Shown: piece by piece, positions 2,688-58,307 of the stretch
How positions within the stretch are numbered: position 1 is the stretch's first letter
Layout of the letters: the number at the start of each line of letters is the position of its first letter
Virus record (IMG/VR): IMGVR_UViG_3300028920_000001
Location: 124,001 to 188,000 of that record
Reading direction: 5' to 3' (one strand)
DNA: 64,000 bases
Position numbers and translations under genes: made by a program
Notes under the pieces: model-generated
What the model saw: the letters and a program-made list of their open reading frames with translations, nothing else
What the model was told of the DNA's origin: nothing
The model's database searches: none

Positions 2688-3098
2688 TTATGATTCCATA
2701 ATTTCAGATACGATTACATAATCCGGTATGCAATTTGTTGGTCGTAATTGAGGGTCTTTGCTAGGATCATTCCGATGTGGACACATCGGATAAAGTTCAG
2801 TTGAGCGAAAATCGCAATCATGAAGAAAACAATAATCATACATCCAATCTGAAGCATCTGGATCTTCTTCAACTTCTAAAGTAACAATATCTAATTTACC
2901 GGATGACCAGATTTTCTTCAGGCAACGTTCAGCAGATCGTCTGGTTTCATAAACTCGAGCTCGAGCATAACGTTTGGTGAACACAGGAACAGAAACAAAT
3001 GTCTCATCATCTCCATCCCATTGAGGAGCAAATTGTGCAGCCCAATGACTAAAGTATTCATTTCTATCATTAATGATTATGGATAATTTTCGCATCAA
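2688..3098 (-). CDS. hypothetical protein, C-terminal motif
   Basis: 136 aa; ends IVSEIMES*. Confidence 0.8.
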   Translation of the reverse strand: MMRKLSIIINDRNEYFSHWAAQFAPQWDGDDETFVSVPVFTKRYARARVYETRRSAERCLKKIWSSGKLDIVTLEVEEDPDASDWMYDYCFLHDCDFRSTELYPMCPHRNDPSKDPQLRPTNCIPDYVIVSEIMES

Positions 3099-3126
3099 TC
3101 TTCCATAATATTATAACACTTAAATT

Positions 3127-3315
3127 TTATCTTTCCATTATCTCAGCTACCATAAATTCCTCTTTAGAAACTATTCTTTCTTGAGAAACGAAATTAGTAA
3201 ATTTATAGCATGTTTTACACATGACATGATATTTATCTCCAATGCATATGTAATAATCAGGTGTTCCTTCACAATTAGGAAAACCTTGTCCATAGTTGGT
3301 ACACCTAATTGACAT
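3127..3315 (-). CDS. small Cys-rich protein, C-terminal motif
   Basis: 62 aa; CxxC; ends MVAEIMER*. Confidence 0.75.
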   Translation of the reverse strand: MSIRCTNYGQGFPNCEGTPDYYICIGDKYHVMCKTCYKFTNFVSQERIVSKEEFMVAEIMER

Positions 3316-3316
3316 A

Positions 3317-4558
3317 CTACCCTTTTACACAGATGATTTGCCGAAGTTCATGCTTAATCTCTACTAAATCCTTTTGGGCTTCCATCACTGCATCAATATC
3401 TTTGTACGCACCCGGAGTTTCGTCCAATACATCCTTGTCCTTACGACATTCAATGCCTTCAGTCGCCTGACGATGATCCTTGAGAGTGAATTGCTGTCGT
3501 GCTTGAGTGCGGCTCATCAAACGACCAGCGCCATGTGAAGCACTGGTGAAAGATTCCGGATTCCCAAGACCGCTAACAATGTAACTTCGTGCGCCCATCG
3601 ATCCTGGAATTATGCCGAGCTGTCCCTTTCGAGCTGAAATTGCGCCCTTCCGAGTGACCCAGATATTATGCTTGAAGTGATTTTCTCGAGTCACGTAATT
3701 ATGATGGCAGTTCACCTCTGTAACATCAGCATCAAATTTTGGAACCAGCTTTGATTTCCGAAGAGTTTTGACGATCGTCTCCATCATGAGTTCACGATTG
3801 ACCTGAGCGTAGCGTTGAGCCCATTGAACCGCTTTCATATATTGATCGAAATGCGGCGTTCCTTCCGGAAAGAACGATAAATCCATGTTAGGCAAATCAA
3901 CATAATATTTCTTCATAACATCCTTAGCTAGGCGAATAAAATAAGTACCAATTCGATTCCCGATTCCGCGAGATCCAGAGTGAAGCACAAGCCACACCTG
4001 ATCATTCTTGTCCAGGCACACTTCGATGAAATGATTGCCTGTGCCAAGCGTTCCAAGCTGCTTTTCTGGTCCTTTATGTTCACATGCTGGATTCGATTCT
4101 TTAATCTTTGTGTAACCAGGCTTAAGTTCCTCCCAAGCCACTTCAACTGCTACTGGCGGATTCTCCCATGAACCCGGATCACGTCCTTTAGCAAATCCGT
4201 GTGGAACCGCCTTTTCGATCAAAGCTCGAATTTTAGCCAAATCCTTGAGCATGGGAGCTCGAAGAGTAGTCTGCACGGCCATCATCCCACAACCTATATC
4301 GACCCCGACCGCCGAAGGAACCACTGCATCTTGGGTTGCAATCACGGTGCCGACTGTAGCACCAATCCCAGCATGCACATCCGGCATCACGGCAACATGT
4401 TTGTAAATGAAGGGAAGATCGGCTACGTAAGCAAGTTGGGCCTCAGCATAGTGCTCTACTGGAACACCAACTGTCCATCGCTTGATGAGATGCTTGTATC
4501 CCTTGGTGATTTCAATATTTCCATCGCGGAAAGTGTGTGGAACATTTTGATCAGTCAT
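3317..4558 (-). CDS. rtcB: RtcB family RNA ligase
   Basis: MPDVHAG, VGVDIGCG, LGTLGTGNHFIE, HSGSRG, HN, IIPGSMG, SHGAGR, DETPGAYK motifs. Confidence 0.97.
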   Translation of the reverse strand: MTDQNVPHTFRDGNIEITKGYKHLIKRWTVGVPVEHYAEAQLAYVADLPFIYKHVAVMPDVHAGIGATVGTVIATQDAVVPSAVGVDIGCGMMAVQTTLRAPMLKDLAKIRALIEKAVPHGFAKGRDPGSWENPPVAVEVAWEELKPGYTKIKESNPACEHKGPEKQLGTLGTGNHFIEVCLDKNDQVWLVLHSGSRGIGNRIGTYFIRLAKDVMKKYYVDLPNMDLSFFPEGTPHFDQYMKAVQWAQRYAQVNRELMMETIVKTLRKSKLVPKFDADVTEVNCHHNYVTRENHFKHNIWVTRKGAISARKGQLGIIPGSMGARSYIVSGLGNPESFTSASHGAGRLMSRTQARQQFTLKDHRQATEGIECRKDKDVLDETPGAYKDIDAVMEAQKDLVEIKHELRQIICVKG

Positions 4559-4566
4559 GGTATCCT

Positions 4567-4866
4567 CTATGAAAATTGTGCTCTATATACCTCAAATTCA
4601 TTCCGATTAAGAACTCTGTATTCAATTACGTCATCCCAGTTATGAATTTCATCTTCGCAGCATAATAAGAGATGATATTCTTTCATGTCATTATAAGTGA
4701 TGCAAAAGATTGGAATAGGACTATTACAAGCTTTAAAATCTACATCTATCATGCTGCAAAATGGGCATTCACGATTCAAATCAAATTTAGCAAGATCCTC
4801 ATCAGTAGGATGTATTAATACATCCTCACCAACCGGAATAATTAATTGTTGATTCTTAGTTGCCAT
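4567..4866 (-). CDS. hypothetical protein
   Basis: 99-aa ORF in coupled minus-strand run; CPFC. Confidence 0.7.
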   Translation of the reverse strand: MATKNQQLIIPVGEDVLIHPTDEDLAKFDLNRECPFCSMIDVDFKACNSPIPIFCITYNDMKEYHLLLCCEDEIHNWDDVIEYRVLNRNEFEVYRAQFS

Positions 4867-5056
4867 TGTTCCAAACGCAGTAATACTTTTTACATCGACC
4901 TTCAGTACACCTTATCCATTTCAATCCAAGAAACCAAGCCAGAGCATCGGAAATCCAACTAACTCGGGTTTCTAATCCTCCAGCTCCGCAATATGGACAA
5001 CGATAAGTCATCGCTTTTCCGAATGTTTTAATATTAGATGTAATGGACCGGAACAT
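4856..5056 (-). CDS. small zinc-finger/membrane protein
   Basis: CPYCG, hydrophobic segment, CxxxxC; true start likely MTYRC (~5011). Confidence 0.6.
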   Translation of the reverse strand: MFRSITSNIKTFGKAMTYRCPYCGAGGLETRVSWISDALAWFLGLKWIRCTEGRCKKYYCVWNNGN

Positions 5057-5250
5057 ACAAATTTATCATTATGATATACCGTAACTCGATCAATCCATCC
5101 CCACTTAAAAGGTTTTTCAGATAATTTCTTGGCTTTATTGACTGCACTTCTTACATGTAAAGCCTGTACTTCATAAGTATGGGTGTCAAATAAGTCATGG
5201 CCTTTAAAGCTCTCGTGCCCTTTTCTGATTTCCACTTTAAAAGTCTTCAT
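5008..5250 (-). CDS. hypothetical protein
   Basis: 80-aa ORF, coupled to neighbours. Confidence 0.7.
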   Translation of the reverse strand: MKTFKVEIRKGHESFKGHDLFDTHTYEVQALHVRSAVNKAKKLSEKPFKWGWIDRVTVYHNDKFVCSGPLHLILKHSEKR

Positions 5251-6395: not shown

Positions 6396-6404
6396 TAGGT
6401 GTAG

Positions 6405-7848: not shown

Positions 7849-8085
7849 TTAACTCTCCATAATGAGAGTTACTAAAACTTCTTCGGGAGTAAGAATTATA
7901 AATCCAGACGTATAACCCGGCTTCATTTTTGCAATTCGTTCTATACACTGTTCACGGCTCGAGAAATGACAGGCATGTCTAATGCTGCTGGTATATTCAT
8001 ATTCATGCCCATCAGACCCTTTAATTAATTTTACATACCAGTTAGTCCCATATCCACCATTTTGAATCACCCATGGGTAGTTCAT
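7849..8085 (-). CDS. hypothetical protein, C-terminal motif
   Basis: Ends ILTPEEVLVTLIMES*. Confidence 0.8.
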   Translation of the reverse strand: MNYPWVIQNGGYGTNWYVKLIKGSDGHEYEYTSSIRHACHFSSREQCIERIAKMKPGYTSGFIILTPEEVLVTLIMES

Positions 8086-8828: not shown

Positions 8829-9111
8829 TTAATTCATAACCCATATGTTCAAGCTCATCATAATCATGACGTTCAGAGTCTATATACGCTCCGTCTTCAT
8901 TTATTCCAATATATTGGAAATAATTTTCATATAAACGAAGAGCTGTACGTATTTTTCCAACTTCATTATGAATTCGAACATGGCATAACACTTTAGACGG
9001 AATACTTTTAAAAATCCTTAACGCATTATCATCTGAAATTAAAACAGTTTCAGATCCGTGCTTTCTAAGCTGATCTCGAACATATTGAAATTTTGTTTCT
9101 GCAAGATTCAT
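8797..9111 (-). CDS. hypothetical protein, variant C-terminal motif
   Basis: Ends IVDYIMEEDD*. Confidence 0.75.
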   Translation of the reverse strand: MNLAETKFQYVRDQLRKHGSETVLISDDNALRIFKSIPSKVLCHVRIHNEVGKIRTALRLYENYFQYIGINEDGAYIDSERHDYDELEHMGYELIVDYIMEEDD

Positions 9112-9419
9112 TAGCTATCCATTATCAAAGCTACCATAGTTTCTTTTGGACCAAGGACTTCAAAATCTGAGAACGGATACTGTTTACTTACATCTGCTCT
9201 CCATCTTTCCAATTCAGATGTAAGAAGCATCAAAGCTTCATTTTCATCTAAGAAAAACGTAGCATTATAAATGTTACCTACAAATTTCATTCCTGTATTC
9301 GATCGTGCAAAATATACTTGCGCGCTTGGTTCATAACCACCAATTACTTTCCATTTTCCATTATATTTAATTACATAACCATAACCTTCGTCATGGGCTT
9401 TAAAATGAGCATCAGACAT
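9111..9419 (-). CDS. hypothetical protein, C-terminal motif
   Basis: Ends VLGPKETMVALIMDS*. Confidence 0.8.
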   Translation of the reverse strand: MSDAHFKAHDEGYGYVIKYNGKWKVIGGYEPSAQVYFARSNTGMKFVGNIYNATFFLDENEALMLLTSELERWRADVSKQYPFSDFEVLGPKETMVALIMDS

Positions 9420-9658
9420 TATGATTCCATCAATCTGGCTATCATAACCTCTGCTGGGTTTAAAATAGTGAAATCTGAACGTATACTATCTTCGTCAACT
9501 AACGCATCCTCAATAATTCTTTCACACACAAATTGGCTAGAAAATAAAGCTGCTTTAGCAATTTCATTTATATAATTCTCAGCAGCTCTATAACTATGTG
9601 TAAAATAACCTAGATCTTTATGCCTAATCACCCACTTATCACCCCAATTACACATCAC
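9419..9658 (-). CDS. hypothetical protein, C-terminal motif
   Basis: Ends ILNPAEVMIARLMES*. Confidence 0.8.
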   Translation of the reverse strand: MMCNWGDKWVIRHKDLGYFTHSYRAAENYINEIAKAALFSSQFVCERIIEDALVDEDSIRSDFTILNPAEVMIARLMES

Positions 9659-9921
9659 GACTCCATTACCGAAAGTAATAACACCTTTTCAGGAGCATAA
9701 ATCTCAAAATCGTTAGCAAGTAATCGTAGATTCCGTGACTTATACCATTTAATAGCTTGCTGAGCTTCTACATAGGACGAATAATGAGTAGCATCTTCAA
9801 TTCTGGGCACTAGGAAAAAAGTGCCGGTAGCATTATGACCAAAGTACCCATCATACCCATCTCCGTCAAAATAAACAATATAACCTATACCAATTTCCAT
9901 TTTATCAAATTTTAAGCCCAT
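9655..9921 (-). CDS. hypothetical protein, C-terminal motif
   Basis: Ends IYAPEKVLLLSVMES*; ORF-track start lies inside tRNA-Thr so moved to the first downstream ATG. Confidence 0.75.
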   Translation of the reverse strand: MGLKFDKMEIGIGYIVYFDGDGYDGYFGHNATGTFFLVPRIEDATHYSSYVEAQQAIKWYKSRNLRLLANDFEIYAPEKVLLLSVMES

Positions 9922-9937
9922 AGTGTAATTTACATAG

Positions 9938-10008
9938 AGCCACCCCAGAGAATCGAACTCCAATCAGTTGTTTACGAAACAACTGCTCTACCATTGAGCT
10001 ACGGTGGC
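9938..10008 (-). tRNA. tRNA-Thr(CGT)
   Basis: Cloverleaf; GTTGT-TTCGTAA-ACAAC; G7.G66 mismatch; 3' T-CTA. Confidence 0.88.
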
Positions 10009-11019: not shown

Positions 11020-11238
11020 TCATGTTTTCATCACCATATCAATAGTTATTTTTCCTTGAGTTTCTTCACAAGTTTCAGGACAAGGCTCACCGCCATGCAC
11101 TGGATGATAAGGTTCTTCTACCATGTAGCGTATTTGATTCTCATCGTCTCTGAGTTGCATAGTCAGCACACCACAATGCTCACATGTTGCAACTATAACT
11201 TTAGAAGTTCTTCTGATTGTTTTCCATTTGTGTTTCAT
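11020..11238 (-). CDS. small HxW/CxxC zinc protein, C-terminal motif
   Basis: MKHKW...CEHCG...C; ends TIDMVMKT*. Confidence 0.8.
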   Translation of the reverse strand: MKHKWKTIRRTSKVIVATCEHCGVLTMQLRDDENQIRYMVEEPYHPVHGGEPCPETCEETQGKITIDMVMKT

Positions 11239-11471
11239 AACGTCATGATTCGCTTAACTAATTCTTCGTCACAGTCAAGCGAAACTTTATATAAATCTAA
11301 TTCATCATCTGTGGGTGGAAAACAAGTATATTTCTCCCCACTGACATGATATCGACTTGTGACAAAATTACCACCACACCTATTACATCCAAATTTAATC
11401 TTCATCCAATGTGGAGCATGAGCTTCATCTGGTGGAATTTCTCGAGGCTGTCTCTTCCAATCATGGTTCAT
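11235..11471 (-). CDS. small HxW/CxxC zinc protein, C-terminal motif
   Basis: MNHDW...CNRCG...DC; ends LVKRIMTL*. Confidence 0.8.
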   Translation of the reverse strand: MNHDWKRQPREIPPDEAHAPHWMKIKFGCNRCGGNFVTSRYHVSGEKYTCFPPTDDELDLYKVSLDCDEELVKRIMTL

Positions 11472-11662
11472 TTTGTAATAATTTTCTTAGGGGTCTTTGT
11501 GGTCACTTCCGCTATCTCATCCAGTATTCTAAATATCTCCGCATCTTCATTAGCTTGGGCTTCTGCTTTAAATAAACAAGATGCACAGATTCTTTTAGAT
11601 TTATCCTGTGGATTTGAGGTAAATCTGGTAAACCCATGGATTGGACAATATTGTGAACTCAT
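11468..11662 (-). CDS. small CxxHG/CxxC protein
   Basis: YCPIHG...ICASC; paralog of 11659..11841. Confidence 0.75.
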   Translation of the reverse strand: MSSQYCPIHGFTRFTSNPQDKSKRICASCLFKAEAQANEDAEIFRILDEIAEVTTKTPKKIITK

Positions 11663-11841
11663 CGGGTCATGATTTTCTTTATAAGTGAAGTTTTGGTTTG
11701 CATTGAAACAGCCAAACAGACTACACAGATTGGATCAGTATACAGTGGCTTTTCATCAATTGATTGTGGAAGCCGAACATGCTTAGTGTTCCCATGTTTT
11801 TGACAATAACGAATACCAACAGATTTCAGTCTGGCAGTCAT
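11659..11841 (-). CDS. small CxxHG/CxxC protein, C-terminal motif
   Basis: YCQKHG...ICVVC; ends LIKKIMTR*. Confidence 0.75.
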   Translation of the reverse strand: MTARLKSVGIRYCQKHGNTKHVRLPQSIDEKPLYTDPICVVCLAVSMQTKTSLIKKIMTR

Positions 11842-12332
11842 AATTGCATAATGTCCTGAATAAACATACGCCGAAAGGCATCAAGTAAAAGCTCAGCAGT
11901 TAAATCTATCAATTGGCAATCAATCGGAACTACGGTATCTCTGAACTCCGAACTAGAACACCAATAATACCGTTTAAAAAATTCACGCTGGCGATTCAAT
12001 AAAGTTTGGCGGCAGTATTCCTCAAGAAAGAAATATGGTCCCAGTCCAATCCGGCCACGGTCATATTCGAATTGAAATTTAATTAGTCTACCATTCCAGT
12101 CATCCCCGATTATCACTCGATCTCCATCATACGACCCTGCCATCATGGCCTTCGTCTTTTCAAAAAACGGGTCACTGATGGAAAGGAAACGGATACGTTG
12201 GATGATCTTCTTTAGTCTTGGGATAGCTTCTTCCTCATGGAAGATGAGCCATTCCTCCGGGTCCGGTCGAACAATTTTTCCCATGATTGCCTCGATAAGT
12301 GAGACAAACAGGGGGACCTCGGCATAGATCAA
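11838..12332 (-). CDS. hypothetical protein, C-terminal motif
   Basis: Ends FIQDIMQL*. Confidence 0.75.
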   Translation of the reverse strand: MIYAEVPLFVSLIEAIMGKIVRPDPEEWLIFHEEEAIPRLKKIIQRIRFLSISDPFFEKTKAMMAGSYDGDRVIIGDDWNGRLIKFQFEYDRGRIGLGPYFFLEEYCRQTLLNRQREFFKRYYWCSSSEFRDTVVPIDCQLIDLTAELLLDAFRRMFIQDIMQL

Positions 12333-12353: not shown

Positions 12354-12977
12354 TCAAGCTCTAGATTTCCAGATTTCAATAATATTAGAATGATATCTCT
12401 CTAGACGATTCCCTAAAGATTCGGAATGTGGTTTTTGCTTTGGCTGAAGATGGACAGCATCTTCACCTAAATAGCAAAGATAATCTGCAATCATACTTCG
12501 ATGGCACTTCCACCATAAGCATTCACAGCACATGATTCCAAGATGCTGAGATTTGGATCGTTCAATCAATTTATCGATCCCATCCAAAAATTCTGGCAGA
12601 GTCATAAACCAACTATAGTCCCACAAGCCCTGATTCCACCAATAAGGCTGATCAGATGGTTGATTATTCTTACCTATCCGTTGTTTAGGGAATTTTCCAT
12701 TGGAATAAGCTCGAACATCAACTAGATGAGCTTCCATCTGATCAGCTAAATAAAGATGCTGATTATTCCATCCACCTAATTCAGGCCAGAATTCATAATT
12801 GATATTGGCTTCAGGAAGCCAATACTCGAGCTCCGCTTTTTTAAATTGATCCCAACGGCTAGTTGGATGTGATCTCACATCAACAATTACCTCAATCGGT
12901 TCAGCTAACTTGAGGAATTCGTCTTTTTCTAGCTTAGAATGTCCTATTGTATAAATCATATTTCCATCACCAACCAA
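12354..12977 (-). CDS. DUF488 family protein
   Basis: IYTIGHS, DVRSHP.SR, MCCECLWWKCHR motifs; start likely MIYTIG (~12959). Confidence 0.85.
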   Translation of the reverse strand: MVGDGNMIYTIGHSKLEKDEFLKLAEPIEVIVDVRSHPTSRWDQFKKAELEYWLPEANINYEFWPELGGWNNQHLYLADQMEAHLVDVRAYSNGKFPKQRIGKNNQPSDQPYWWNQGLWDYSWFMTLPEFLDGIDKLIERSKSQHLGIMCCECLWWKCHRSMIADYLCYLGEDAVHLQPKQKPHSESLGNRLERYHSNIIEIWKSRA

Positions 12978-13270
12978 ACCAAAAGATCTGGTTCTAAATC
13001 AGAATCTAATCTACTGGACCAGCCCATCAAGCGACTATCTAGATAATCTCCACCGCCTTGTTCATATACCCTAATTTTAGCTTGATAGCCTACTTTAGGT
13101 AAGTGGCTAATACGATCTCCATAGACTCGATACTGACCCTCCATAGTAATCACGTCCGCTGTAACCCAGTCAAGAGTGTCTATATCTTTGAAATTTATTA
13201 TGATCCCTCGTAATTCTTGATACCTTCCAACTCTATCAGCTGGATATTCAAGATTAGGATCAAAAATCAT
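12956..13270 (-). CDS. hypothetical protein, C-terminal motif
   Basis: Ends LVWLVMEI*. Confidence 0.75.
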   Translation of the reverse strand: MIFDPNLEYPADRVGRYQELRGIIINFKDIDTLDWVTADVITMEGQYRVYGDRISHLPKVGYQAKIRVYEQGGGDYLDSRLMGWSSRLDSDLEPDLLVWLVMEI

Positions 13271-13479: not shown

Positions 13480-13496
13480 GATTGAATTTACATTAG

Positions 13497-47814: not shown

Positions 47815-48048
47815 TCATTCATCCATTATTTGTTGAATCATATACTCTTGAATTGTGATTCTGGACCCGTGCATGAATTTCGCATGGTCCGCACAACAGA
47901 GAAATGGTCTCATTTCCACGATAGGGATTGCATTTTTATTTATGATTTTTGTTTTCATTGAATAAACAAATATGGCTTCACCCATACAGCGATAATAACC
48001 ACCAAAACAAGATGGTTGATATTCGCACATGTACTCCGGCAGTTTCAT
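47815..48048 (-). CDS. small Cys-rich protein, C-terminal motif
   Basis: Ends MIQQIMDE*. Confidence 0.75.
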   Translation of the reverse strand: MKLPEYMCEYQPSCFGGYYRCMGEAIFVYSMKTKIINKNAIPIVEMRPFLCCADHAKFMHGSRITIQEYMIQQIMDE

Positions 48049-48281
48049 GTCTCCATGACCTGAGAAACAAGAATTAAACCTTTTGCTTTCTTAATTAATT
48101 TCCGCTTTACTTTAATAGGAAACCAACAATAACTCCATCCATCATAACTAAAATTTCCCCGTTCCTTTGTGTAGACTTCAGGTTTATTGACATTAAATAC
48201 AACTTTGCAAGGCCACCCATCCCAAATTAGGCAAACCTCTGCGTAATCTTTATTACCCAATTTTTCTCGAGGCTTACCCAT
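48045..48281 (-). CDS. hypothetical protein, C-terminal motif
   Basis: Ends LVSQVMET*. Confidence 0.75.
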   Translation of the reverse strand: MGKPREKLGNKDYAEVCLIWDGWPCKVVFNVNKPEVYTKERGNFSYDGWSYCWFPIKVKRKLIKKAKGLILVSQVMET

Positions 48282-48568
48282 TATTCATCGAAAAGCTCAC
48301 GAAGTGAGAGTATATGTTTAACTTCTAACCACGGTACAAAGGTGACCGTTTCATCTCCCTTTGCCCTAAAATGTTCAACTGACATGTTAGCTAAATCCCA
48401 ATTCTGAAAAGCAATTTTATTAAAATCACGAAGTGCACACACCCAAAAACCATTACATCCTGTTGATAGAAACTCAGGATTATCTCCAACACCTTTTCGC
48501 ATCACAGCATAATTGCTAAATGGCATGTGCCACGATGGAGGTCTAGGCGGTTTTTCCCAGTCTGTCAT
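48281..48568 (-). CDS. hypothetical protein, variant motif
   Basis: YAVMRK...PEFLS paralog of 48565..48831; ends LRELFDE*. Confidence 0.75.
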   Translation of the reverse strand: MTDWEKPPRPPSWHMPFSNYAVMRKGVGDNPEFLSTGCNGFWVCALRDFNKIAFQNWDLANMSVEHFRAKGDETVTFVPWLEVKHILSLRELFDE

Positions 48569-48831
48569 TCTGCCATTAACCGGTAGACTTGAGCAATTTC
48601 TAAAAAATTAGACCATGTGATAATTTGAATAGAAGAGTCGCTCTTACGAAGGTTAGCAGCTTTTAACCCAGCTGAAATCTTTAAATATTTAGTAACAAAA
48701 GTATTCAACCTGAAATCAAACTTATCAAGCGGAATTGACCACCACGTGTCTTCTTGCCCAAAACTGTAATGCTGTGGAACTGACAAAAATTCTGGAATTC
48801 CATGGCTAGTTCTCATGATTACATACTTCAT
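48565..48831 (-). CDS. hypothetical protein, C-terminal motif
   Basis: MKYVIMR...PEFLS; ends QVYRLMAE*. Confidence 0.8.
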   Translation of the reverse strand: MKYVIMRTSHGIPEFLSVPQHYSFGQEDTWWSIPLDKFDFRLNTFVTKYLKISAGLKAANLRKSDSSIQIITWSNFLEIAQVYRLMAE

Positions 48832-49058
48832 GAATCCATCACTTTATTTACTATTATTGATTCATATGAAACAACATCTATATATGAAAAATTATGTCCA
48901 AACACTTGCTCAACAAAAGAGTGAACTTCTTTTTGAAGAAAAGTCTTAGCCTCTTCGACAACAGAAGTCCAACCATAATCTGGGCCCCAAGGGACGCCAT
49001 CGTCTTTATCGAGGATGCACAATAAATATCCATCTTTATTTTTAATTACATACTTCAT
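48828..49058 (-). CDS. hypothetical protein, C-terminal motif
   Basis: MKYVIK; ends IVNKVMDS*. Confidence 0.8.
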   Translation of the reverse strand: MKYVIKNKDGYLLCILDKDDGVPWGPDYGWTSVVEEAKTFLQKEVHSFVEQVFGHNFSYIDVVSYESIIVNKVMDS

Positions 49059-49258
49059 GAGTTCATTATCCTATTAACTAACCAAGTATCATATTCCCCG
49101 AGGGAAAGAACTCTGATATCGGGCCGAAAATAGAAATGTTTTGACTTCCTGTTTACATGTTTAGCACAACGAGCATAAACATGTTTCTCATTAAACAATA
49201 AAAATATTCCTGCAGGTCTGTCACAGATTTCACACTTATGTCGGACTACACACTTCAT
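49055..49258 (-). CDS. small CxxC/CxxH zinc protein, C-terminal motif
   Basis: CEICDRPA...RCAKH; ends LVNRIMNS*. Confidence 0.8.
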   Translation of the reverse strand: MKCVVRHKCEICDRPAGIFLLFNEKHVYARCAKHVNRKSKHFYFRPDIRVLSLGEYDTWLVNRIMNS

Positions 49259-49800: not shown

Positions 49801-49802
49801 CT

Positions 49803-50036
49803 TTACGACCTCATGATTGAAGAAACAGAATTAAGCTTATCGCATTCTGCTTGAGCTTCTTCATAAATATTAAACATCTGATCTTCAGTGGCTAATTTAC
49901 GTGAAAGAGCGTACTTTTTAGAGGTTATCCACACGATCCAATAAGACATCTTCTTACGAGGGCCACATCCTCTTCGAGGGATCTTCTTGGTGGAAGACTG
50001 TGGGACGTACACAGTATCTTCGTAGGGATTTTTCAT
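49803..50036 (-). CDS. hypothetical protein, C-terminal motif
   Basis: Ends SVSSIMRS*. Confidence 0.75.
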   Translation of the reverse strand: MKNPYEDTVYVPQSSTKKIPRRGCGPRKKMSYWIVWITSKKYALSRKLATEDQMFNIYEEAQAECDKLNSVSSIMRS

Positions 50037-50302
50037 GCAGTCATCACCTGCAGCATCGCGATTTCATCACGTGGAATTTTGATCACTTCGTCAGCATCCG
50101 CCCACGTGACGATTTTGCGATGACGAAAGCACCTGGCATGGATTTCCGGTTCTTGTCCTTCACGGAGGACTAAGAATGCGAAATCCACAGTTCGCTCGAA
50201 CTGAGAATTGCAATAGGGGCACTTGTTGATTTCTTCCACGCGAGAATGAGTGACCTGATGGCCACACACATCATAGCGCTTCAGCGTATCAAATACTGCC
50301 AT
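50033..50302 (-). CDS. small zinc protein, C-terminal motif
   Basis: CPYC...RCFRH; ends AMLQVMTA*; GAGGTG RBS. Confidence 0.8.
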   Translation of the reverse strand: MAVFDTLKRYDVCGHQVTHSRVEEINKCPYCNSQFERTVDFAFLVLREGQEPEIHARCFRHRKIVTWADADEVIKIPRDEIAMLQVMTA

Positions 50303-51028: not shown

Positions 51029-51056
51029 AAATACAGCGGAGCTGTAACGATTTACG
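51029..51056 (-). promoter_or_regulatory. phage promoter-like motif
   Basis: CGTAAA-N13-GCTGTATTT; upstream block overlaps stop of 51052..51423. Confidence 0.6.
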
Positions 51057-51423
51057 CCTCCATCACTTTTCTAACCATGGTCTCTTGGATTCGATGTACA
51101 ACTTCATCTGGCGGAATACCCGATTCAAGAATCATTTCTACTATCTCATCTAAACATTCATCAACATAAATTATAGCACGCTTGATACATTCTTTCTTAT
51201 TGGGATGGAAACTAAAAGCTCGGGGACCACTTGCCTCCCATTGTCTATCTTCCTCTCGGCGCAAGATTCTTACAGACCCACTATGAACTGAAACTGTGTC
51301 TCCTCTTTTAAACAACTTACCCAGTTCCTCTTTAGCCTCCGGGCTCATAAATCCACCCGCTGCCGCCCGCCTTTTCCAGAGTTCTCTTTCTTCCCTCTCT
51401 TCTTTAAGGGTCTTATATGTCAT
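51052..51423 (-). CDS. hypothetical protein, extended C-terminal motif
   Basis: Ends IQETMVRKVMEA*. Confidence 0.8.
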   Translation of the reverse strand: MTYKTLKEEREERELWKRRAAAGGFMSPEAKEELGKLFKRGDTVSVHSGSVRILRREEDRQWEASGPRAFSFHPNKKECIKRAIIYVDECLDEIVEMILESGIPPDEVVHRIQETMVRKVMEA

Positions 51424-51770
51424 GGGTCCATCACTTCATGAATCACAATTGTAGGAAACTTGGCTAAAAGCAGATTTTTGAAGGTTTCGTAGTGCTGTAC
51501 TACAACCACAACATATGTACTGCTTTTACCTACTCTGGTCTGTCCCCAGGTTAAATCCGGGGTGGCTTTAGACACATTATGAATAAATGTGTCTGTGCGC
51601 TTCATAATTGTCCTACTAAAACGTACAGAAGCTACACTATGCTGTTCAATCCATTTGCCTGCTTTATTACGAACATCCTCACGAGAATAAACCTGCTCTA
51701 ACAAATCATTAAATGCCGGATATCCTAACGGCACGTCACCAAGATCATTCCAATTACGTACAGCAGTCAT
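51420..51770 (-). CDS. hypothetical protein, C-terminal motif
   Basis: Ends VIHEVMDP*. Confidence 0.8.
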   Translation of the reverse strand: MTAVRNWNDLGDVPLGYPAFNDLLEQVYSREDVRNKAGKWIEQHSVASVRFSRTIMKRTDTFIHNVSKATPDLTWGQTRVGKSSTYVVVVVQHYETFKNLLLAKFPTIVIHEVMDP

Positions 51771-52324
51771 TTTTCCATAGTTTCTTTAACTTGAAGAAAA
51801 TCAAATTCTTCTTTAAAGAGTTCTTCAATTCTTCCAAGAGCAACGTGACTTCGGGCTCGTTTTAAGCCATCAGCAATTACATTTCGGGCCATTTTATCAT
51901 TATGGGCTTGGATTCGATCTTGATAATTGCTATTGAAAGATTTAATTTGTTCTTTAATACGCTGAATCAAATACTTGAAATAAGGATCCTTTTTCAGGGG
52001 CGCTTCAGATAAACAATAATTTCGATCGTAATCCTCAATCAGCTCCAAAATTTCATGAATAACAAAATCCCGACCTGTTTTCAGGTCTCTCTTGGAGAAT
52101 AGAAAACTATTTTGTTTGTAAGTAGGTTTGGTTGGATCTTTAAACTCATATCTTGATGCTTCGAGTACCTCATTTGCTGGCGGCCCGAATCCAAGAATAA
52201 AAGACACTCCGAGGTTATCTATATTTATTCCTTGTACATTCATTTCGTTACAGGCTTTTTCGAACAATTTTAAATTTTGATTTAGATAAAATTCTTCATT
52301 ATCCTTCTGAATTTTAATAGCCAT
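51767..52324 (-). CDS. hypothetical protein, extended C-terminal motif
   Basis: Ends QVKETMEK*. Confidence 0.8.
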   Translation of the reverse strand: MAIKIQKDNEEFYLNQNLKLFEKACNEMNVQGINIDNLGVSFILGFGPPANEVLEASRYEFKDPTKPTYKQNSFLFSKRDLKTGRDFVIHEILELIEDYDRNYCLSEAPLKKDPYFKYLIQRIKEQIKSFNSNYQDRIQAHNDKMARNVIADGLKRARSHVALGRIEELFKEEFDFLQVKETMEK

Positions 52325-52521
52325 TACGACACCATGAGTTGTCGAATCCAGTCCTCAGCACAATTACAAGAAGCTTTAGGTTTTTGACCAGACTTCACCA
52401 CCGCCCTTACATGACATTTCTTACAAATATATCTTTCCATCCAATCTTTAGTGACCGGATTCTGATATTGGCCATCTCGACGCCATTTGTGACGACCTTG
52501 AAATCGAAAATGACTCTTCAA
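52324..52521 (-). CDS. small HxW/CxxC zinc protein, C-terminal motif
   Basis: RHKW...CKKC...C.C; ends WIRQLMVS*. Confidence 0.75.
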   Translation of the reverse strand: MKSHFRFQGRHKWRRDGQYQNPVTKDWMERYICKKCHVRAVVKSGQKPKASCNCAEDWIRQLMVS

Positions 52522-53102
52522 GATTTCATCACTCCTTCAATAGTTAATTCTCTAATCACATCTTCCATCAATTCACAAATCTCAGTAAGCGGAATTTTAT
52601 TATCAAAACTCTTAGCATTTGCTTTAATAGACGCTCGAGCTTCTTGCTTGAGAATTTGATATTGTTGATCTTTTAAATCAATCTGACTAATGATTTGTTT
52701 TACCTGTGCTCTAGTGCGATTAAATGCATCTTTAAGCTCAGGTAGTGCATAAATGCGCTCAGTAAGCGCTTCATGTTGATTCTCTCGCAAACCCTTGATT
52801 TTCTTATCACCAAATCGGTTTTTACCATTAGCTATTTTCTGATAAAGAAACCCATCTAAGATAGATCCTCCGTAGTTATTTCGATTCAGCCACACATTTT
52901 CTTTAAAGGCTTTGAATTTTTGGGAAGCAGAAAAACTCAAGCAATTACTATTCCAGTCTCCTTGTGGCTTTTCTTTACTGCGAAATGGTCCTATGTAATA
53001 ATGGAAATAAGAACTACCAGAATAAACCTTATACGCTGATATATTTACTCTGGGTAAGAGCTTTTGGATCTTCTCGACTATTTCATCTACCTTAGTTCGC
53101 AT
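52518..53102 (-). CDS. hypothetical protein, extended C-terminal motif
   Basis: Ends TIEGVMKS*. Confidence 0.8.
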   Translation of the reverse strand: MRTKVDEIVEKIQKLLPRVNISAYKVYSGSSYFHYYIGPFRSKEKPQGDWNSNCLSFSASQKFKAFKENVWLNRNNYGGSILDGFLYQKIANGKNRFGDKKIKGLRENQHEALTERIYALPELKDAFNRTRAQVKQIISQIDLKDQQYQILKQEARASIKANAKSFDNKIPLTEICELMEDVIRELTIEGVMKS

Positions 53103-53599: not shown

Positions 53600-53997
53600 T
53601 ATCCTTTTCCTTTATGATTCTCGTTGGGACGATTCTCAGCTACTTTGCGAAATGGAATACCAGGGTCATTCATCAAGCGACCCATTTGACAAATTGCAGC
53701 CGAAAACAACCCGGAGTTATTCTGCCAGAAATGCTTATAATTTTCGCGATCCTTCACTGAATCAAATGATAAAATCTCGCATCCACTTTGCTTACCAGCG
53801 GCATTCTGCACACCCAAATATCGAACTGTTGATTCCTCACTACAGTCTGGGCAATGAGTAATTTTGCCGCCAGCTCTTCGCTTTTCAGGGCTGTGTAGGT
53901 CGAACTCGTCTCCACATTCAATACATACACGAATCTGGCTCATATTCAGTAATACGCGGAGGTTGAGCCAATCTACGACTCCATAATTTCTTCGCAC
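53599..53997 (-). CDS. zinc-ribbon protein
   Basis: CIECG...HCPDC; start likely MSQIRVC (53943). Confidence 0.75.
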   Translation of the reverse strand: MRRNYGVVDWLNLRVLLNMSQIRVCIECGDEFDLHSPEKRRAGGKITHCPDCSEESTVRYLGVQNAAGKQSGCEILSFDSVKDRENYKHFWQNNSGLFSAAICQMGRLMNDPGIPFRKVAENRPNENHKGKG

Positions 53998-54575
53998 TGA
54001 ATTTCACGCCACAGGTTTAATACTTCTTCTTTATCCCAGGCTGACTGATACAGCTTACGATAGAGTGCTTTAAGCTCATTTGACTGACGATCACGAATAC
54101 GACCTTTGAATTTTCTAATTTTGCTTTGAATAATTTCAATCTGATCAGGATCTTGCAAATATGATTTTACTGCATTATCCATATATTGCTTAAATCGGTT
54201 ATATTCAATTTCAAACTTAGGCTCTTCTAGAAAATCACGACATAGTTGATCGATAAAAGGTGAATTAAAATGATCACTTGGAACGAACGATCTCAACAAA
54301 TTAGGAAGAAAATATCCAGGTGTAATTGTGCGTTTGACTGATTTCTTTTTAGTCTCAAATGAAGTAGGCATCATACAAGAATATGTAACTCTTACCAATG
54401 ATGCAATTTGATTATCTCCTATCTCGTATATTTTTACGCCCACCTCCTTGAGATGAGCATAATTAATGAAATAGATCAATTTTAGGGACGCTTTTTTATA
54501 TTCTCCCCGCAGATTTTCGCCAGCAATTCGATTATTAACTATCCGCTCAATTAAACCAGATGAAACAACGCTCAT
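53973..54575 (-). CDS. hypothetical protein, extended C-terminal motif
   Basis: Ends WREIQCEEIMES*. Confidence 0.8.
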   Translation of the reverse strand: MSVVSSGLIERIVNNRIAGENLRGEYKKASLKLIYFINYAHLKEVGVKIYEIGDNQIASLVRVTYSCMMPTSFETKKKSVKRTITPGYFLPNLLRSFVPSDHFNSPFIDQLCRDFLEEPKFEIEYNRFKQYMDNAVKSYLQDPDQIEIIQSKIRKFKGRIRDRQSNELKALYRKLYQSAWDKEEVLNLWREIQCEEIMES

Positions 54576-56483: not shown

Positions 56484-57023
56484 GTGATGGCCTGTAATGT
56501 GCTCATTCATCGGCTTAAGACGATCCATAAATCCGCTTCTAAGAAAAATTATGTGGTTAAAACTAATGCGTGTGGATGCAAGACTCATCGCATTCTAGTG
56601 GTAGACATTACACGAGGATATATCTCAGAAAAAGTAGATCTCACTCTTCAATTTGAATTATGTAAAGCTCATGCTGCAAAATTGGAACGTGAAGGGATTA
56701 ACTTTTTCAATAATCCAGAAGTAACTAATCAAACTAACAATCCTCAAGCACTAAAGGAATACTTTTCGAGTCCTGGTCATCGATATCGTCGTCATGTTTT
56801 TCGAAATTGGTATCGCATTTCCAGTATCAACTCTTATGAAATGACACCCATTGAGGATACGACTATTCCATCAAAACGAATTCAAAGACGGAATGCAGTT
56901 AAGGACCGGATCAAGCGTATGATGGACCAATCCAACACGAAGCTATTGACCGACCAGGATTGGTATGATGCTATGGAACTCGCTCTTAAAGAACATATGA
57001 TCGAACAAGTTATGAAATCCTAA
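56484..57023 (+). CDS. hypothetical protein, extended C-terminal motif
   Basis: Ends HMIEQVMKS*. Confidence 0.8.
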   Translation: MMACNVLIHRLKTIHKSASKKNYVVKTNACGCKTHRILVVDITRGYISEKVDLTLQFELCKAHAAKLEREGINFFNNPEVTNQTNNPQALKEYFSSPGHRYRRHVFRNWYRISSINSYEMTPIEDTTIPSKRIQRRNAVKDRIKRMMDQSNTKLLTDQDWYDAMELALKEHMIEQVMKS

Positions 57024-57031: not shown

Positions 57032-57253
57032 ATGTCCGTTATAGGAGGTATAAAAAGAAAACGCTGCGTAGTGTGTGGTAAACCAGCCACCCGCTTTTAT
57101 ATAGGTAAATCTGAAAAAACTGGCATTAATGATGAGTATGTTTACTTTATGAGTCCACGATGCACAGCGCATCTTCCTCCTGCGGATAATCCAATGCAGC
57201 TGAAGGAATGCTCGAGGGAAGAAATTATAACACTTGAAGTAATGGAATCATAA
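57032..57253 (+). CDS. small CxxC/CxxH zinc protein, C-terminal motif
   Basis: CVVCGKPA...RCTAH; ends ITLEVMES*. Confidence 0.8.
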   Translation: MSVIGGIKRKRCVVCGKPATRFYIGKSEKTGINDEYVYFMSPRCTAHLPPADNPMQLKECSREEIITLEVMES

Positions 57254-57254
57254 A

Positions 57255-57482
57255 GTGTCACATTCTAAAAAATATATAGTTGTTAATTGTAATGGACGAG
57301 GATTACTTTATCTCAAAAGAATGGGAGAAGGAAACCGTGTATGGTCTTACAATTTAGAATTAGCACAAAAATATAGCCGTTCTCAGATTTATGAAATCAT
57401 GCAGCATAGATTGTGGGTACCGAATCGGTGGAAAATCATGAGTGAAAAAAGGGCTCTGATTTATACTATTATGAATACCTAA
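57255..57482 (+). CDS. hypothetical protein, C-terminal motif
   Basis: KKYIVV...LAQKY; ends LIYTIMNT*. Confidence 0.75.
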   Translation: MSHSKKYIVVNCNGRGLLYLKRMGEGNRVWSYNLELAQKYSRSQIYEIMQHRLWVPNRWKIMSEKRALIYTIMNT

Positions 57483-57488
57483 ATACGT

Positions 57489-57520
57489 CTGAACCCGGGA
57501 TCGAGGGAGCCCGGGTTCAG
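57489..57520 (+). terminator. GC-rich hairpin
   Basis: CTGAACCCGGG-N10-CCCGGGTTCAG right after the 57482 stop. Confidence 0.55.
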
Positions 57521-57578
57521 TACGTCTCACACTGGCGATAGCCAAATGTACTCATATTTTACACTAAGAATCCATCAA

Positions 57579-57606
57579 CGTAAATATTGAATTTTTACGT
57601 GTACAG
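57579..57606 (+). promoter_or_regulatory. phage promoter-like motif
   Basis: CGTAAA-N13-CGTGTACAG, ATG 8 nt downstream. Confidence 0.55.
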
Positions 57607-57614
57607 TAGACTAC

Positions 57615-58307
57615 ATGACTTCGGTAACAGATTCAGAAATAGAACAAGAGATTCAATATTTAGAACGAATTAAACGGATAGATCAACAGATAGATCAAAT
57701 TGAATGCGTAAAGGATAGAATTTATAAAGACCTCGAATCGGACATTAATCAGGCTTGTGCAGAAATAGCCAAATTGATTCGAGATGCAAAACCAACCACA
57801 GCCAGTGTCATGGCTGGAGGTTCTACCATCCAATGTAGAGTCCGGGCCCTTGGAAGAATTTATCGTACTTCAGCCTGTGACGAATGGATTCGGGATGCTG
57901 ATTTATCTGTTTGGGGTAAAAATTTATTTATTGGTACCATAATTAGATTGTTTAAATTAGACAATCATTCAATCATTGACCCTCTCAGGAAAAAGGCTCT
58001 AGATTTAGCTACTGAACGAATTCCTAAAATTTCTGGGCATTTTCAATTTACCGATCAAATCAACTCATTTTTAGAAAAACCTGAAATTTATCCTGAATGT
58101 GAAAAATTAGTTAAAGAAATCTACGCCAAATTTCGGGTTGTGCTCTATCAAGGCAATCTCGAGCAAAAGAAACAGGCACACGAATTAAGAAAAGCTCTGA
58201 AGAAACTGAAACCAATTTTACTTGATGCGCTTAGAGCTGGTCTTACAGATGAAGACCTGCAGACTTTAGTTGATGAATCTCGGGTTGAGATCGTAATGAA
58301 AAGTTAA
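57615..58307 (+). CDS. hypothetical protein, extended C-terminal motif
   Basis: Ends AGLTDEDLQTLVDESRVEIVMKS*. Confidence 0.85.
   Translation: MTSVTDSEIEQEIQYLERIKRIDQQIDQIECVKDRIYKDLESDINQACAEIAKLIRDAKPTTASVMAGGSTIQCRVRALGRIYRTSACDEWIRDADLSVWGKNLFIGTIIRLFKLDNHSIIDPLRKKALDLATERIPKISGHFQFTDQINSFLEKPEIYPECEKLVKEIYAKFRVVLYQGNLEQKKQAHELRKALKKLKPILLDALRAGLTDEDLQTLVDESRVEIVMKS

What the first reader, a model, noticed from the sequence alone, without database searches (positions are those of the whole stretch)
2688..58307. The motif caps at least three distinct longer tail architectures
Seen: upstream of the motif the tails fall into classes. (a) A ~35-45 aa helix-turn-helix, K/R-rich helix then G/S-x-T/S-x-E/D-E/D helix then motif, in 14133, 14649, 28340, 39103, 40197, 51052, 52518, 53973, 56484 and 57615 (e.g. 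DALRAGLTDEDLQTLVDESRVEIVMKS; YALKHGASADRLREILNQCIVKVTMEQ). (b) A hydrophobic strand plus S/T/P-x-E-E cap (ILTPEEVLVTLIMES, IVSKEEVEVAKVMQS, ECSREEIITLEVMES). (c) A Cys-capped helix (DCDEELVKRIMTL, ECEDNLVRLIMEE). Inference: the final ~10-aa helix is the conserved unit and has been attached convergently, or by module shuffling, to different folds.
Basis: partly seen in the sequence, partly recalled or inferred. Interest (0 to 1): 0.6.

Follow-up and report, generated by a model that had tools for sequence, protein, structure and literature searches.

The report
Shared C-terminal tag of huge-phage proteins
About a quarter of the genes of this 427-kb bacteriophage, mostly small proteins with no detectable similarity to each other, end in the same 11-residue helix (V-x-x-V/I-M-E-S, then stop).

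Summary
The window lies in a complete 426,960-bp tailed-phage genome. It sits almost only at the extreme C-terminus.

It is a protein-level signal. Ser at -1 uses all six codons, all three stops occur, and residue -3 is Met in this phage but His, Gln or Leu in related phages, in a genome-wide concerted way.

The classes hold up only in part:
- **Class c (Cys at -12)** is strong, but it is one paralogous zinc-binding family (His...CxxC...Cys), not convergence.
- **Class b (Ser/Thr at -13, acidic, aromatic)** is a real extended motif.
- **Class a** fails a leave-one-out HMM test.
- **No class:** more than half of all tails.

Of 349 tailed proteins in three genomes, 308 have no BLAST relative. 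Tails are gained and lost on homologous bodies, and no two tails are near-identical in DNA. So I find no recent module shuffling.

Best reading: a C-terminal recognition tag kept by selection and read in trans by an unknown partner. The main rival is a structural relic of old paralog radiations. I found no such proteome-wide tag described for phages.

The parts
2315..2680 (+). ORF 121 aa ending in the tail; no cap class; convergent with the next ORF
2688..3098 (-). ORF 136 aa, tail, no cap class
2669..2699 (.). 12-bp perfect inverted repeat made by the last codons of the two convergent tailed ORFs
   Evidence: dG -13.5, z -3.7
3127..3315 (-). ORF 62 aa, tail class b
7849..8085 (-).
9111..9419 (-). 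ORF 102 aa, b-like tail with Pro cap
9419..9658 (-). ORF 79 aa, b-like tail; AF2 model: strand 63-66 then helix 68-78
9655..9963 (-). ORF 102 aa, b-like tail
11020..11238 (-). ORF 72 aa, tail
11235..11471 (-).
11659..11841 (-). ORF 60 aa, tail
11838..12332 (-). ORF 164 aa, tail
12956..13270 (-). ORF 104 aa, tail
13270..13542 (-). ORF 90 aa, class c
13777..14133 (+). ORF 118 aa, tail
14133..14558 (+). ORF 141 aa, class a (Ser at -20)
14649..14870 (-). ORF 73 aa, class a; BLAST kin of 56484-57023
14870..15391 (-). ORF 173 aa, tail
20417..20668 (+). ORF 83 aa, tail; paralog of the next
20665..20967 (+). ORF 100 aa, tail
22296..22583 (-). ORF 95 aa, tail
22760..22957 (-).
22947..23261 (-). ORF 104 aa, class c with His at -3
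24805..25104 (-). ORF 99 aa, tail
25101..25406 (-). ORF 101 aa, tail
25403..25603 (-).
28340..28924 (-).
29261..29581 (-). ORF 106 aa, tail
31538..31909 (-). ORF 123 aa, tail
32292..32552 (-). ORF 86 aa, class b
33484..33936 (-). ORF 150 aa, tail
33933..34382 (-). ORF 149 aa, tail; kin of 45210-45647
37801..38145 (-). ORF 114 aa, tail
38184..38453 (-). ORF 89 aa, tail with His at -3
38455..39045 (-). ORF 196 aa, class c
39103..40200 (-). ORF 365 aa, class a; the longest tailed protein in the window
40197..40883 (-).
41159..41899 (-). ORF 246 aa, tail
41896..42243 (-). ORF 115 aa, cap at -20
42772..42987 (-). ORF 71 aa, class c with N-terminal His-x-Trp
44530..45213 (-). ORF 227 aa, Thr cap at -20; member of a family with 103 representatives that nearly all end at the same point
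45210..45647 (-). ORF 145 aa, tail; two paralogs in this genome lack it
45681..45977 (-). ORF 98 aa, tail
46397..46687 (+). ORF 96 aa, tail
47815..48048 (-). ORF 77 aa, class b
48045..48281 (-). ORF 78 aa, tail
48565..48831 (-). ORF 88 aa, tail
48828..49058 (-). ORF 76 aa, class b
49055..49258 (-). ORF 67 aa, tail
49803..50036 (-). ORF 77 aa, tail
50033..50302 (-). ORF 89 aa, b-like with Pro cap
51052..51423 (-). ORF 123 aa, class a
51420..51770 (-). ORF 116 aa, tail
51767..52324 (-). ORF 185 aa, tail
52324..52521 (-). ORF 65 aa, class c
52518..53102 (-).
53973..54575 (-). ORF 200 aa, class a
56484..57023 (+).
57032..57253 (+).
57255..57482 (+). ORF 75 aa, tail
57615..58307 (+).
58858..59157 (-). 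ORF 99 aa, tail, outside the stated range
61491..61952 (-). ORF 153 aa, tail, outside the stated range
61952..62374 (-). ORF 140 aa, tail, outside the stated range
59462..60934 (-). DUF2201 protein (HExxH peptidase motif plus VWA MIDAS motif); found in all tail-bearing relatives tested, absent from the tail-free ones; candidate reader, unproven
63265..63999 (-). C-terminal part of a MoxR-type AAA_5 ATPase ORF (389 aa, runs past the window end), the usual partner of DUF2201

Best explanation
The tail is a protein-level C-terminal recognition tag. It is a short amphipathic helix with a fixed hydrophobic stripe (Val/Ile at -7, Val/Ile at -4, Met at -3), acidic flanks (-11/-10, -5, -2) and a Ser/Thr that must be the last residue.

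Selection keeps it on hundreds of small accessory proteins that show no detectable similarity to each other, in one clade of huge tailed phages. The most likely reason is that one common partner, phage- or host-encoded, reads it in trans together with the free carboxyl end. That partner would sort, dock or hand over these proteins.

The three "tail architectures" are what lies in front of that helix:
- a Ser/Thr N-cap at -20, giving a long helix;
- a Ser/Thr-x-acidic-Glu capping box at -13 after a beta-strand;
- the last Cys ligand of a small zinc-binding domain at -12.

Shown: the motif, its strict terminal position, its protein-level conservation, its lineage-specific residue at -3, and its gain and loss on homologous bodies.

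Inferred: that it is read in trans.
For: 1. Abundance: 202 ORFs against 7 in the control. The same consensus recurs in relatives G001, G005, G007 and G006, and is absent from G008, G009 and G011 of the same capsid clade.

2. Strictly terminal: at a PSSM score of 14 bits or more, 113 hits are at the last residue against 2 deep internal and 2 within 10 residues of the end, in 126,819 positions of G000. The figures are 43 against 2 in G001, 88 against 1 in G005, and none in G008.

3. Protein level, not DNA or RNA level: Ser at -1 uses all six codons and all three stops are used. Residue -3 is also His or Gln, whose codons share nothing with ATG. 40 of 141 tailed genes have a convergent downstream neighbour, so the motif is not a translational coupling signal.

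4. Concerted, lineage-specific residue at -3:
- G000: M122/H3/L1
- G005: M89/H3
- G001: M40/H14/Q6
- G007: M20/H9/Q6
- G006: Q5/M4/H4
- contig L363: H6 of 8
- contig L315: L9/I1 at GC 68%
- contig L322: L4 at GC 42%
Heterogeneity chi-square is 471, matched by 0 of 5000 permutations. The Leu type occurs at both high and low GC, so base composition does not explain it.

5. Bodies show no detectable similarity: 308 of 349 are BLAST singletons, and Pfam and PHROG are almost blank.

6. The tail is dispensable for the body. The A_54718 orthologs (55% identical) carry it in G000 and G005 but not in G001. Paralogs of 45210-45647 lack it.

7. Beta-branched Val/Ile at -7 and -4 (about 95% at -4) and a near-invariant Met are unusual for generic helix packing. 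This last point is my inference.

8. Within one family of 103 representatives, the end point and the -7/-4/-3/-1 pattern are among the best conserved columns.
Against: - No reader was found. The one complex prediction (DUF2201 with the 227-aa tailed neighbour) gave no verdict. No S41, ClpP, Lon or PDZ_2 domain is detectable in the phages.
- Both AF2 models place the terminal helix with high confidence (pLDDT about 85-91, 97-98). That fits a helix packed on its own protein at least as well as a free tag. Burial could not be measured.
- Class c is one paralogous family, so part of the tail's spread is by descent.
- Contig L362 carries the MoxR-DUF2201-family module without genome-wide tails.
- There are no expression, proteome or host data.
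Confidence: 0.55

Rival explanations
1. Structural relic of paralog radiations. A few ancestral small-protein families were duplicated many times and diverged until only their C-terminal helix, the folding nucleus, stayed recognisable. Under this reading nothing reads the tail in trans.
For: - Class c is such a family. 59 of 61 members have an upstream CxxC, and 39 of 61 have His-x-Trp/Phe near the N-terminus against about 7% background.
- Small tandem paralog groups exist, for example 7849-9963.
- The neighbours on contig L315 all start with a Cys-Pro-x-Cys knuckle.
- AF2 places the helix confidently within the fold.
Against: - Lengths run from 50 to 365 aa, and the predicted folds differ.
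- The tail is present or absent on clearly orthologous bodies, including one with a DHHA1 domain.
- A folding nucleus does not explain why the protein must stop exactly after Glu-Ser.
- It does not explain why polar residues -2 and -1 are conserved.
- It does not explain why -3 switches in concert across a whole genome.
Confidence: 0.25
2. Nascent-chain or termination signal. The last residues act inside the ribosome at the stop codon, for example to tune release or re-initiation in long overlapping operons of a phage that carries its own EF-Tu and tRNAs.
For: - The motif is tied to the stop codon position.
- 46 of the 101 tailed genes with a same-strand downstream gene overlap its start by 4 or 1 bases.
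- The window encodes EF-Tu and 12 tRNAs.
Against: - All three stops are used and there is no marked preference at the base following the stop.
- 40 of 141 tailed genes have no co-directional downstream gene.
- The hydrophobic and acidic periodicity reaches back to -18, like a folded amphipathic helix.
- EF-Tu has no reciprocal best hit in G001, yet G001 has tails.
Confidence: 0.07
3. DNA-level boundary element. Under this reading the conserved gene end would be a recombination or regulatory site, like the promoter/stem-loop cassettes that shuffle genes in T4-type phages. That would fit the reader's module shuffling.
For: - Convergent tails form perfect hairpins, at window 2669-2699. Similar overlapping convergent pairs occur in G000 and G005.
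- Tailed genes lie in the hypervariable 60-250 kb region.
Against: - Synonymous positions are free.
- The best pair of tails shares 29 of 36 bases, and the distribution has one peak near 15 of 36.
- His, Gln and Leu variants keep the amino-acid pattern, not the bases.
- The motif is frame-locked to the stop.
Confidence: 0.03

Closest known systems
Capsid targeting sequence (CTS) of T4-type internal proteins
   Same: A highly diverse set of small, fast-evolving phage proteins from hypervariable regions shares only one short terminal peptide, which a common assembly partner reads (PMC3012670).
   Different: The CTS is N-terminal, binds the scaffolding core and is cut off by the prohead protease. 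It marks a handful of proteins per phage. Here the tag is C-terminal, marks 13 to about 170 proteins per genome, shows no clear cleavage site, and virion loading is untested.
Encapsulin cargo-loading (targeting) peptides
   Same: A short C-terminal peptide on unrelated cargo proteins, read by an HK97-fold shell protein. This is from my own knowledge. The phage capsid protein here is HK97-type and unusually conserved: 90% identity between G000 and G001, against a 45% median.
   Different: The consensus differs: encapsulin peptides are Gly/Ser/Leu-rich and extended. Cargo genes sit next to the shell gene, whereas tailed genes here lie far from the capsid gene. Binding was not tested.
C-terminal translocation signals of Dot/Icm type IVB effectors
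   Same: Hundreds of unrelated proteins carry a loose C-terminal signal of about 20 residues, with Glu-rich positions and a hydrophobic residue at -3/-4. This is from my own knowledge. Acidic peaks here are at -18, -14, -11/-10, -5 and -2, and hydrophobic residues at -4/-3.
   Different: That is a bacterial secretion system of intracellular pathogens. No secretion machinery is known or was sought here, and this motif is far sharper and strictly anchored to the last residue.
C-terminal degrons (ssrA-type tags read by ClpXP, Lon, FtsH, Tsp)
   Same: The signal depends on the free C-terminus, and one reader acts on many substrates.
   Different: Known bacterial C-degrons end in non-polar residues and are unstructured (my knowledge). 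This tail ends in Glu-Ser and is predicted helical. No ClpP, Lon, S41 or PDZ_2 domain was detected in the phages.
Promoter/stem-loop shuffling cassettes of T4-type hyperplastic regions
   Same: A repeated element at the borders of small genes in a hypervariable phage region.
   Different: Those are intergenic DNA elements. Here the conservation is in amino acids, not bases.

Membership tests
T4-type capsid targeting sequence | Short peptide at the N-terminus of the cargo | tested here: not met
   The motif is at the extreme C-terminus.
T4-type capsid targeting sequence | Carried by diverse small proteins of hypervariable regions that share nothing else | tested here: met
   308 of 349 are BLAST singletons, and the genes lie in the 60-250 kb variable region.
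T4-type capsid targeting sequence | Cargo is found in the virion and the signal is removed by the prohead protease | not testable with these tools
   There is no virion proteome, and the phage is known only from metagenomes.
Encapsulin cargo-loading peptide | C-terminal location on unrelated cargo | tested here: met
Encapsulin cargo-loading peptide | Binding to the inner face of the HK97-fold shell protein | not tested
Encapsulin cargo-loading peptide | Cargo gene adjacent to the shell gene | tested here: not met
   The capsid gene is near 304 kb. Tailed genes lie mostly at 60-250 kb.
ssrA-like C-degron | Non-polar last residues with free carboxylate | tested here: not met
   The last two residues are mostly Glu/Asp and Ser/Thr.
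Dot/Icm-type C-terminal signal | Hydrophobic residue at -3/-4 and Glu-rich stretch upstream | tested here: met
   Positional profile. This is a resemblance only.
Dot/Icm-type C-terminal signal | A type IVB secretion system and its coupling complex in the same cell | not testable with these tools
   The host is unknown. The EF-Tu comparison gave no host clue.
Sortase / exosortase-type C-terminal sorting signals | Motif followed by a hydrophobic transmembrane helix and a basic tail | tested here: not met
   Nothing follows the motif. Only 9 of 141 tailed proteins have any TM-like segment.
Small zinc-binding domain (class c only) | Four metal ligands at conserved spacing | tested here: met
   His-x-Trp/Phe near the N-terminus, CxxC 11-27 residues later, and Cys at -12. 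This is a sequence pattern only; the structure was not modelled.
DNA-level gene-boundary cassette | Conserved nucleotides irrespective of reading frame | tested here: not met

The most novel reading that the evidence does not exclude
The clade runs a virus-encoded protein-sorting code. A dedicated reader recognises the C-terminal helix and its free carboxylate on up to a quarter of the phage proteome, and co-evolves with it, with residue -3 being Met, His/Gln or Leu depending on lineage. Candidates are the conserved MoxR ATPase / VWA-metallopeptidase module, whose syntenic partner protein itself ends in the tail, or the capsid for co-injection.
Probability: 0.3. Interest if true: 0.9.

Novelty: new variant of a known kind. 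Interest (0 to 1): 0.75.

Why it matters
Most genes of huge phages are small ORFans that nobody can group or assign a function. A shared, lineage-tuned C-terminal tag on 13 to about 170 of them per genome would give them a common handle:
- it defines a class of accessory proteins from sequence alone;
- it predicts one common partner that can be fished out with a peptide;
- it offers a portable tag for directing foreign proteins to whatever that partner is.

If the partner is the capsid, these phages would inject a protein arsenal far larger than the T4 internal proteins. If it is a protease or a chaperone-like ATPase, it would be a phage-wide timing or quality-control system. Either way, the function of hundreds of ORFans becomes experimentally testable.

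Tried and rejected
- Phage database (blastn, 8 kb of the window): no match.
- Relatives of the 365-aa tailed protein in IMG/VR: none.
- Relatives found through RtcB were mostly unrelated phages. Only G001 shared the motif.
- Host inference from EF-Tu: about 60% identity to bacteria of many phyla, so no clue.
- Phylogenetic profile for a reader: 79 proteins are shared by G000, G001 and G005 and absent from G008, too many to be useful.
- DUF2201 with the tailed 227-aa neighbour in complex prediction: score 0.00, no verdict, not evidence either way.
- Fold searches of both models (PDB Foldseek, a wide PDB search of the 227-aa model, BFVD for the 79-aa model): nothing significant.
- ESM Atlas look-alikes of a class-c protein: only unnamed clusters and weak zinc-finger-like structure rows.
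- Iterative HMM from the four class-b paralogs: no growth.
- Mixture model of positions -24 to -9: BIC prefers one cluster.
- Association of Cys at -12 with a non-Met residue at -3: not significant (p=0.30).
- k-mer search for a promoter upstream of tailed operons: only tRNA-like words.
- Phage-encoded S41, ClpP, Lon or PDZ_2: none detected.
- Leu-type pattern in G006-G010: at control level.
- Literature searches for such a motif: nothing relevant.
I tried no other route, so there are no read or expression data.
- The M16 peptidase at 25736-26830 ends in a motif-like string. I treat this as chance, and it has no reciprocal best hit in G001.

Full report
**What the window is.** The window is bases 124,001-188,000 of a complete 426,960-bp virus record with direct terminal repeats.
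- Its conserved genes are those of a tailed phage: HK97-type major head protein, portal, family-A DNA polymerase, ribonucleotide reductase and collagen-like fibres. These were identified on the G001 orthologs.
- The window is part of a 190-kb hypervariable stretch of short, tightly packed genes.
- It also holds 12 tRNA genes, a divergent EF-Tu, RtcB, an RNA ligase, DUF488, an Apyc1-like anti-Pycsar enzyme, a LAGLIDADG endonuclease, an M16 peptidase and a DUF2201 protein.
- All reading was done with table 11. Nothing suggested another code.

**The observation.**
- In the window, 64 of 380 ORFs of at least 40 aa end in [IVLFT]-Met-x-x.
- In the whole genome, 202 do, against 7 in the reversed-sequence control. 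Nearly all lie between 60 and 250 kb.
- In a non-overlapping gene set, 172 of 679 genes carry the motif, and none of these is 400 aa or longer.
- The consensus is acidic or Leu at -10, Ile/Leu at -8, Val at -7, Val/Ile at -4, Met at -3, Glu/Asp at -2 and Ser at -1.
- The greedy gene set misses a few true tailed ORFs, such as 11235-11471 and 22760-22957. The counts are therefore slightly low.

**Level of the signal.**
- Ser at -1 is written with all six codons, Val/Ile with many, and all three stop codons follow the motif.
- When tails are scored without position -3, that residue is Met in 122 of 127 in this phage. In relative G001 it is Met 40, His 14 and Gln 6. His and Gln codons share nothing with ATG.
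- The motif is almost only at the last residue. There are 113 terminal hits against 2 deep internal ones in 126,819 positions, and the pattern is the same in two relatives.
- 40 of 141 tailed genes face a convergent neighbour, so the motif is not a coupling signal for a downstream gene.
- No two tails are close in DNA. The best pair shares 29 of 36 bases, and the distribution has one peak.
- The signal is therefore in the protein and is anchored to the free C-terminus.

**Spread among relatives.** The capsid protein finds 476 related IMG/VR stretches.

| Genome or contig | Tails | Residue at -3 |
|---|---|---|
| G005 (436 kb, GC 50%) | about 100 | M89/H3 |
| G001 (393 kb) | about 80 | M40/H14/Q6 |
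| G007 | 37 | M20/H9/Q6 |
| G006 | 13 | Q5/M4/H4 |
| G008, G009, G011 (capsid protein 78-82% identical) | none | n/a |
| L363 | 8 | His in 6 |
| L315 (GC 68%) | 10 | Leu 9, Ile 1 |
| L322 (GC 42%) | 4 | Leu in all |
| L317 | 22 | M16/Q3/H2 |

The short contigs were found through one tailed family. The heterogeneity between genomes is extreme (chi-square 471, 0 of 5000 permutations). Because the Leu type occurs at both high and low GC, base composition does not explain it. A whole-genome preference for one residue at one position of an otherwise shared motif is what co-evolution with a single reader would produce.

**The tail classes.** I tested these on 349 tails from G000, G001 and G005.
- **Class c.** Cys peaks sharply at -12 (61 tails, p=7e-45), again at -9, and at -26 to -30. 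59 of 61 members have an upstream CxxC. 39 of 61 have His-x-Trp/Phe in the first 40 residues, against about 7% elsewhere, and the spacings are regular. Class c is therefore one paralogous family of small zinc-binding proteins, and the tail helix starts at its last ligand. That is common descent, not convergence.
- **Class b.** Ser/Thr at -13 (77 tails, p=6e-7), with acidic residues at -11/-10 and often an aromatic at -9, is a real 16-residue extended motif. It reads as a strand followed by a helix capping box. The AF2 model of 9419-9658 has strand 63-66 and helix 68-78 (pLDDT 81 overall).
- **Class a.** Ser/Thr at -20 is only mildly enriched (59 tails, p=0.012). With all ten in the model, only two further proteins are found, both in G001.
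- **Overall.** A mixture model prefers one cluster by BIC. 198 of 349 tails, and 37 of 62 in the window, fit no class. The classes are best described as three registers of helix N-cap in front of one constant unit.

**Different bodies, and gain and loss.**
- 308 of 349 tailed proteins have no BLAST relative among 1,868 proteins of three genomes. There are 12 all-tail families and 13 mixed ones.
- The mixed families show the tail is separable. A conserved 245-aa protein (55% identity) has it in G000 and G005, but ends five residues earlier without it in G001. 45210-45647 has it, while two paralogs in the same genome end in Lys-rich tails instead. A DHHA1-domain protein has it only in G001.
- Pfam and PHROGs are blank for 60 of the 61 window proteins. 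Among 75 larger tailed proteins of G001 and G005, only NUDIX, DHHA1, a weak kinase hit and a collagen hit appear.

**One deep family.** The 227-aa protein at 44530-45213 belongs to a family with 103 representatives at 50% clustering.
- Nearly all of them end at the same column, and 72 of 104 keep the strict tail. Residue -3 is Met most often, then His or Gln, then Leu, Ile and others.
- On a quick tree built without the last 12 residues, the label at -3 is clustered (32 changes against 40 for shuffles, 0 of 200). It still switched many times. Branches are long, so only the clustering is safe to read.
- Its AF2 model is confident (pLDDT 88.6). It has a beta-rich N-terminal part and an all-helical C-terminal half, and the terminal helix 209-226 is at pLDDT 97-98. 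No known fold matches.
- The gene sits beside a MoxR-type AAA_5 ATPase and the DUF2201 protein in many contigs. In three genomes DUF2201 keeps an HExxH peptidase motif and a VWA MIDAS motif.
- DUF2201 is present in all tail-bearing genomes tested and absent from G008 and G009. That also follows plain phylogeny. Contig L362 has the three-gene module without genome-wide tails.
- The complex prediction of DUF2201 with this protein gave no verdict.

**Interpretation.** I commit to a trans-read C-terminal recognition tag (confidence 0.55). The reasons are:
- the strict terminal anchoring;
- the conserved polar end;
- the beta-branched Val/Ile and Met stripe;
- the presence on bodies with no detectable similarity, with gain and loss;
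- above all, the genome-wide concerted residue at -3.

What the tag is for is not shown. The closest analogue in logic is the T4 capsid targeting sequence, which is the only thing shared by a highly diverse set of internal defence-countering proteins (PMC3012670). Encapsulin cargo peptides, Dot/Icm signals and C-degrons are other models of the same kind. The membership rows show that none of them fits as a family.

The main rival is a structural relic of paralog radiations (0.25). It is true for class c, and the confident AF2 helices favour it. It does not explain the exact end point, the polar end or the concerted switch. A nascent-chain or termination role (0.07) and a DNA-level element (0.03) are largely excluded by codon and stop usage and by the convergent gene ends.

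**Limits.**
- The gene sets are greedy longest-ORF sets, not model-based calls, and in GC-rich genomes they contain spurious ORFs.
- The host is unknown.
- The lineage-specific types Leu and His rest on short contigs with 4-10 tails each.

Noticed in passing
window 2669-2699: Two convergent tailed genes end seven bases apart. Their identical last four codons form a perfect 12-bp hairpin (dG -13.5 kcal/mol, z -3.7). Overlapping convergent pairs, where Ser-stop (TCATGA) is its own reverse complement, occur at G000 121434-121457 and G005 266511-266534.
   Followed up: partly
window 1069-2268 (-), with tRNAs at 842-1024, 6404-6626, 9937-10933, 13686-13761 and 15483-15821: The phage encodes a full-length EF-Tu that is only about 60% identical to any bacterial EF-Tu, beside 12 tRNA genes. 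EF-Tu has no reciprocal best hit in relative G001.
   Followed up: partly
window 3317-4558 (-), 8085-8828 (-), 12354-12977 (-): RtcB RNA ligase, a second RNA ligase and a DUF488 protein lie among the tailed genes. This looks like an RNA or tRNA repair set of the kind used against anticodon nucleases.
   Followed up: no
window 24008-24796 (-): A 262-aa metallo-beta-lactamase-fold protein matches the anti-Pycsar Apyc1 family (E 3e-33). This suggests the region is an anti-defence arsenal.
   Followed up: no
window 59462-60934 (-) and 63265 to beyond the window end (-); G001 346-350 kb; G005 26-31 kb; L362 7399-10780: A MoxR-type AAA_5 ATPase, a DUF2201 protein with intact HExxH and MIDAS motifs, the 227-280 aa tailed family and a small BRCT protein keep company across distant phages. 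In L362 the first three are contiguous.
   Followed up: partly
window 42772-42987, 52324-52521, 13270-13542, 22947-23261, 38455-39045 and many in G001/G005: A previously unnoticed family of 60-100 aa proteins has His-x-Trp near the N-terminus, a central CxxC and a Cys 12 residues from the end. There are 12 copies in G000, 24 in G001 and 25 in G005.
   Followed up: yes
L315 (Logan contig, GC 68%): Seven of the twelve called genes start with a Cys-Pro-x-Cys knuckle at residues 4-7, and ten of the twelve end in Val-Leu-Glu-Ser or a near variant. Each start (GTG or ATG) overlaps the previous stop.
   Followed up: partly
G000 304457-305350 and G001 246243-247211: The major head protein is 90% identical between two phages whose median ortholog identity is 45%. 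One small tailed ORF of G000 (238529-238918) and one tailed ORF in the window give weak matches to the head protein family.
   Followed up: no
window 35909-36994 (+): A LAGLIDADG homing endonuclease gene lies on the opposite strand inside the minus-strand gene array. Another lies next to the DNA ligase in L363.
   Followed up: no
window 16415-18266 (-): Several adjacent ORFs repeat a Trp-Cys-Pro-x-Cys zinc-ribbon-like unit and have no tail.
   Followed up: no
G000 169979-170407, 182304-182708, 154875-155381: Where a homolog lacks the tail, it ends instead in a Lys-rich stretch. This may be a second kind of C-terminal ending in this region.
   Followed up: no
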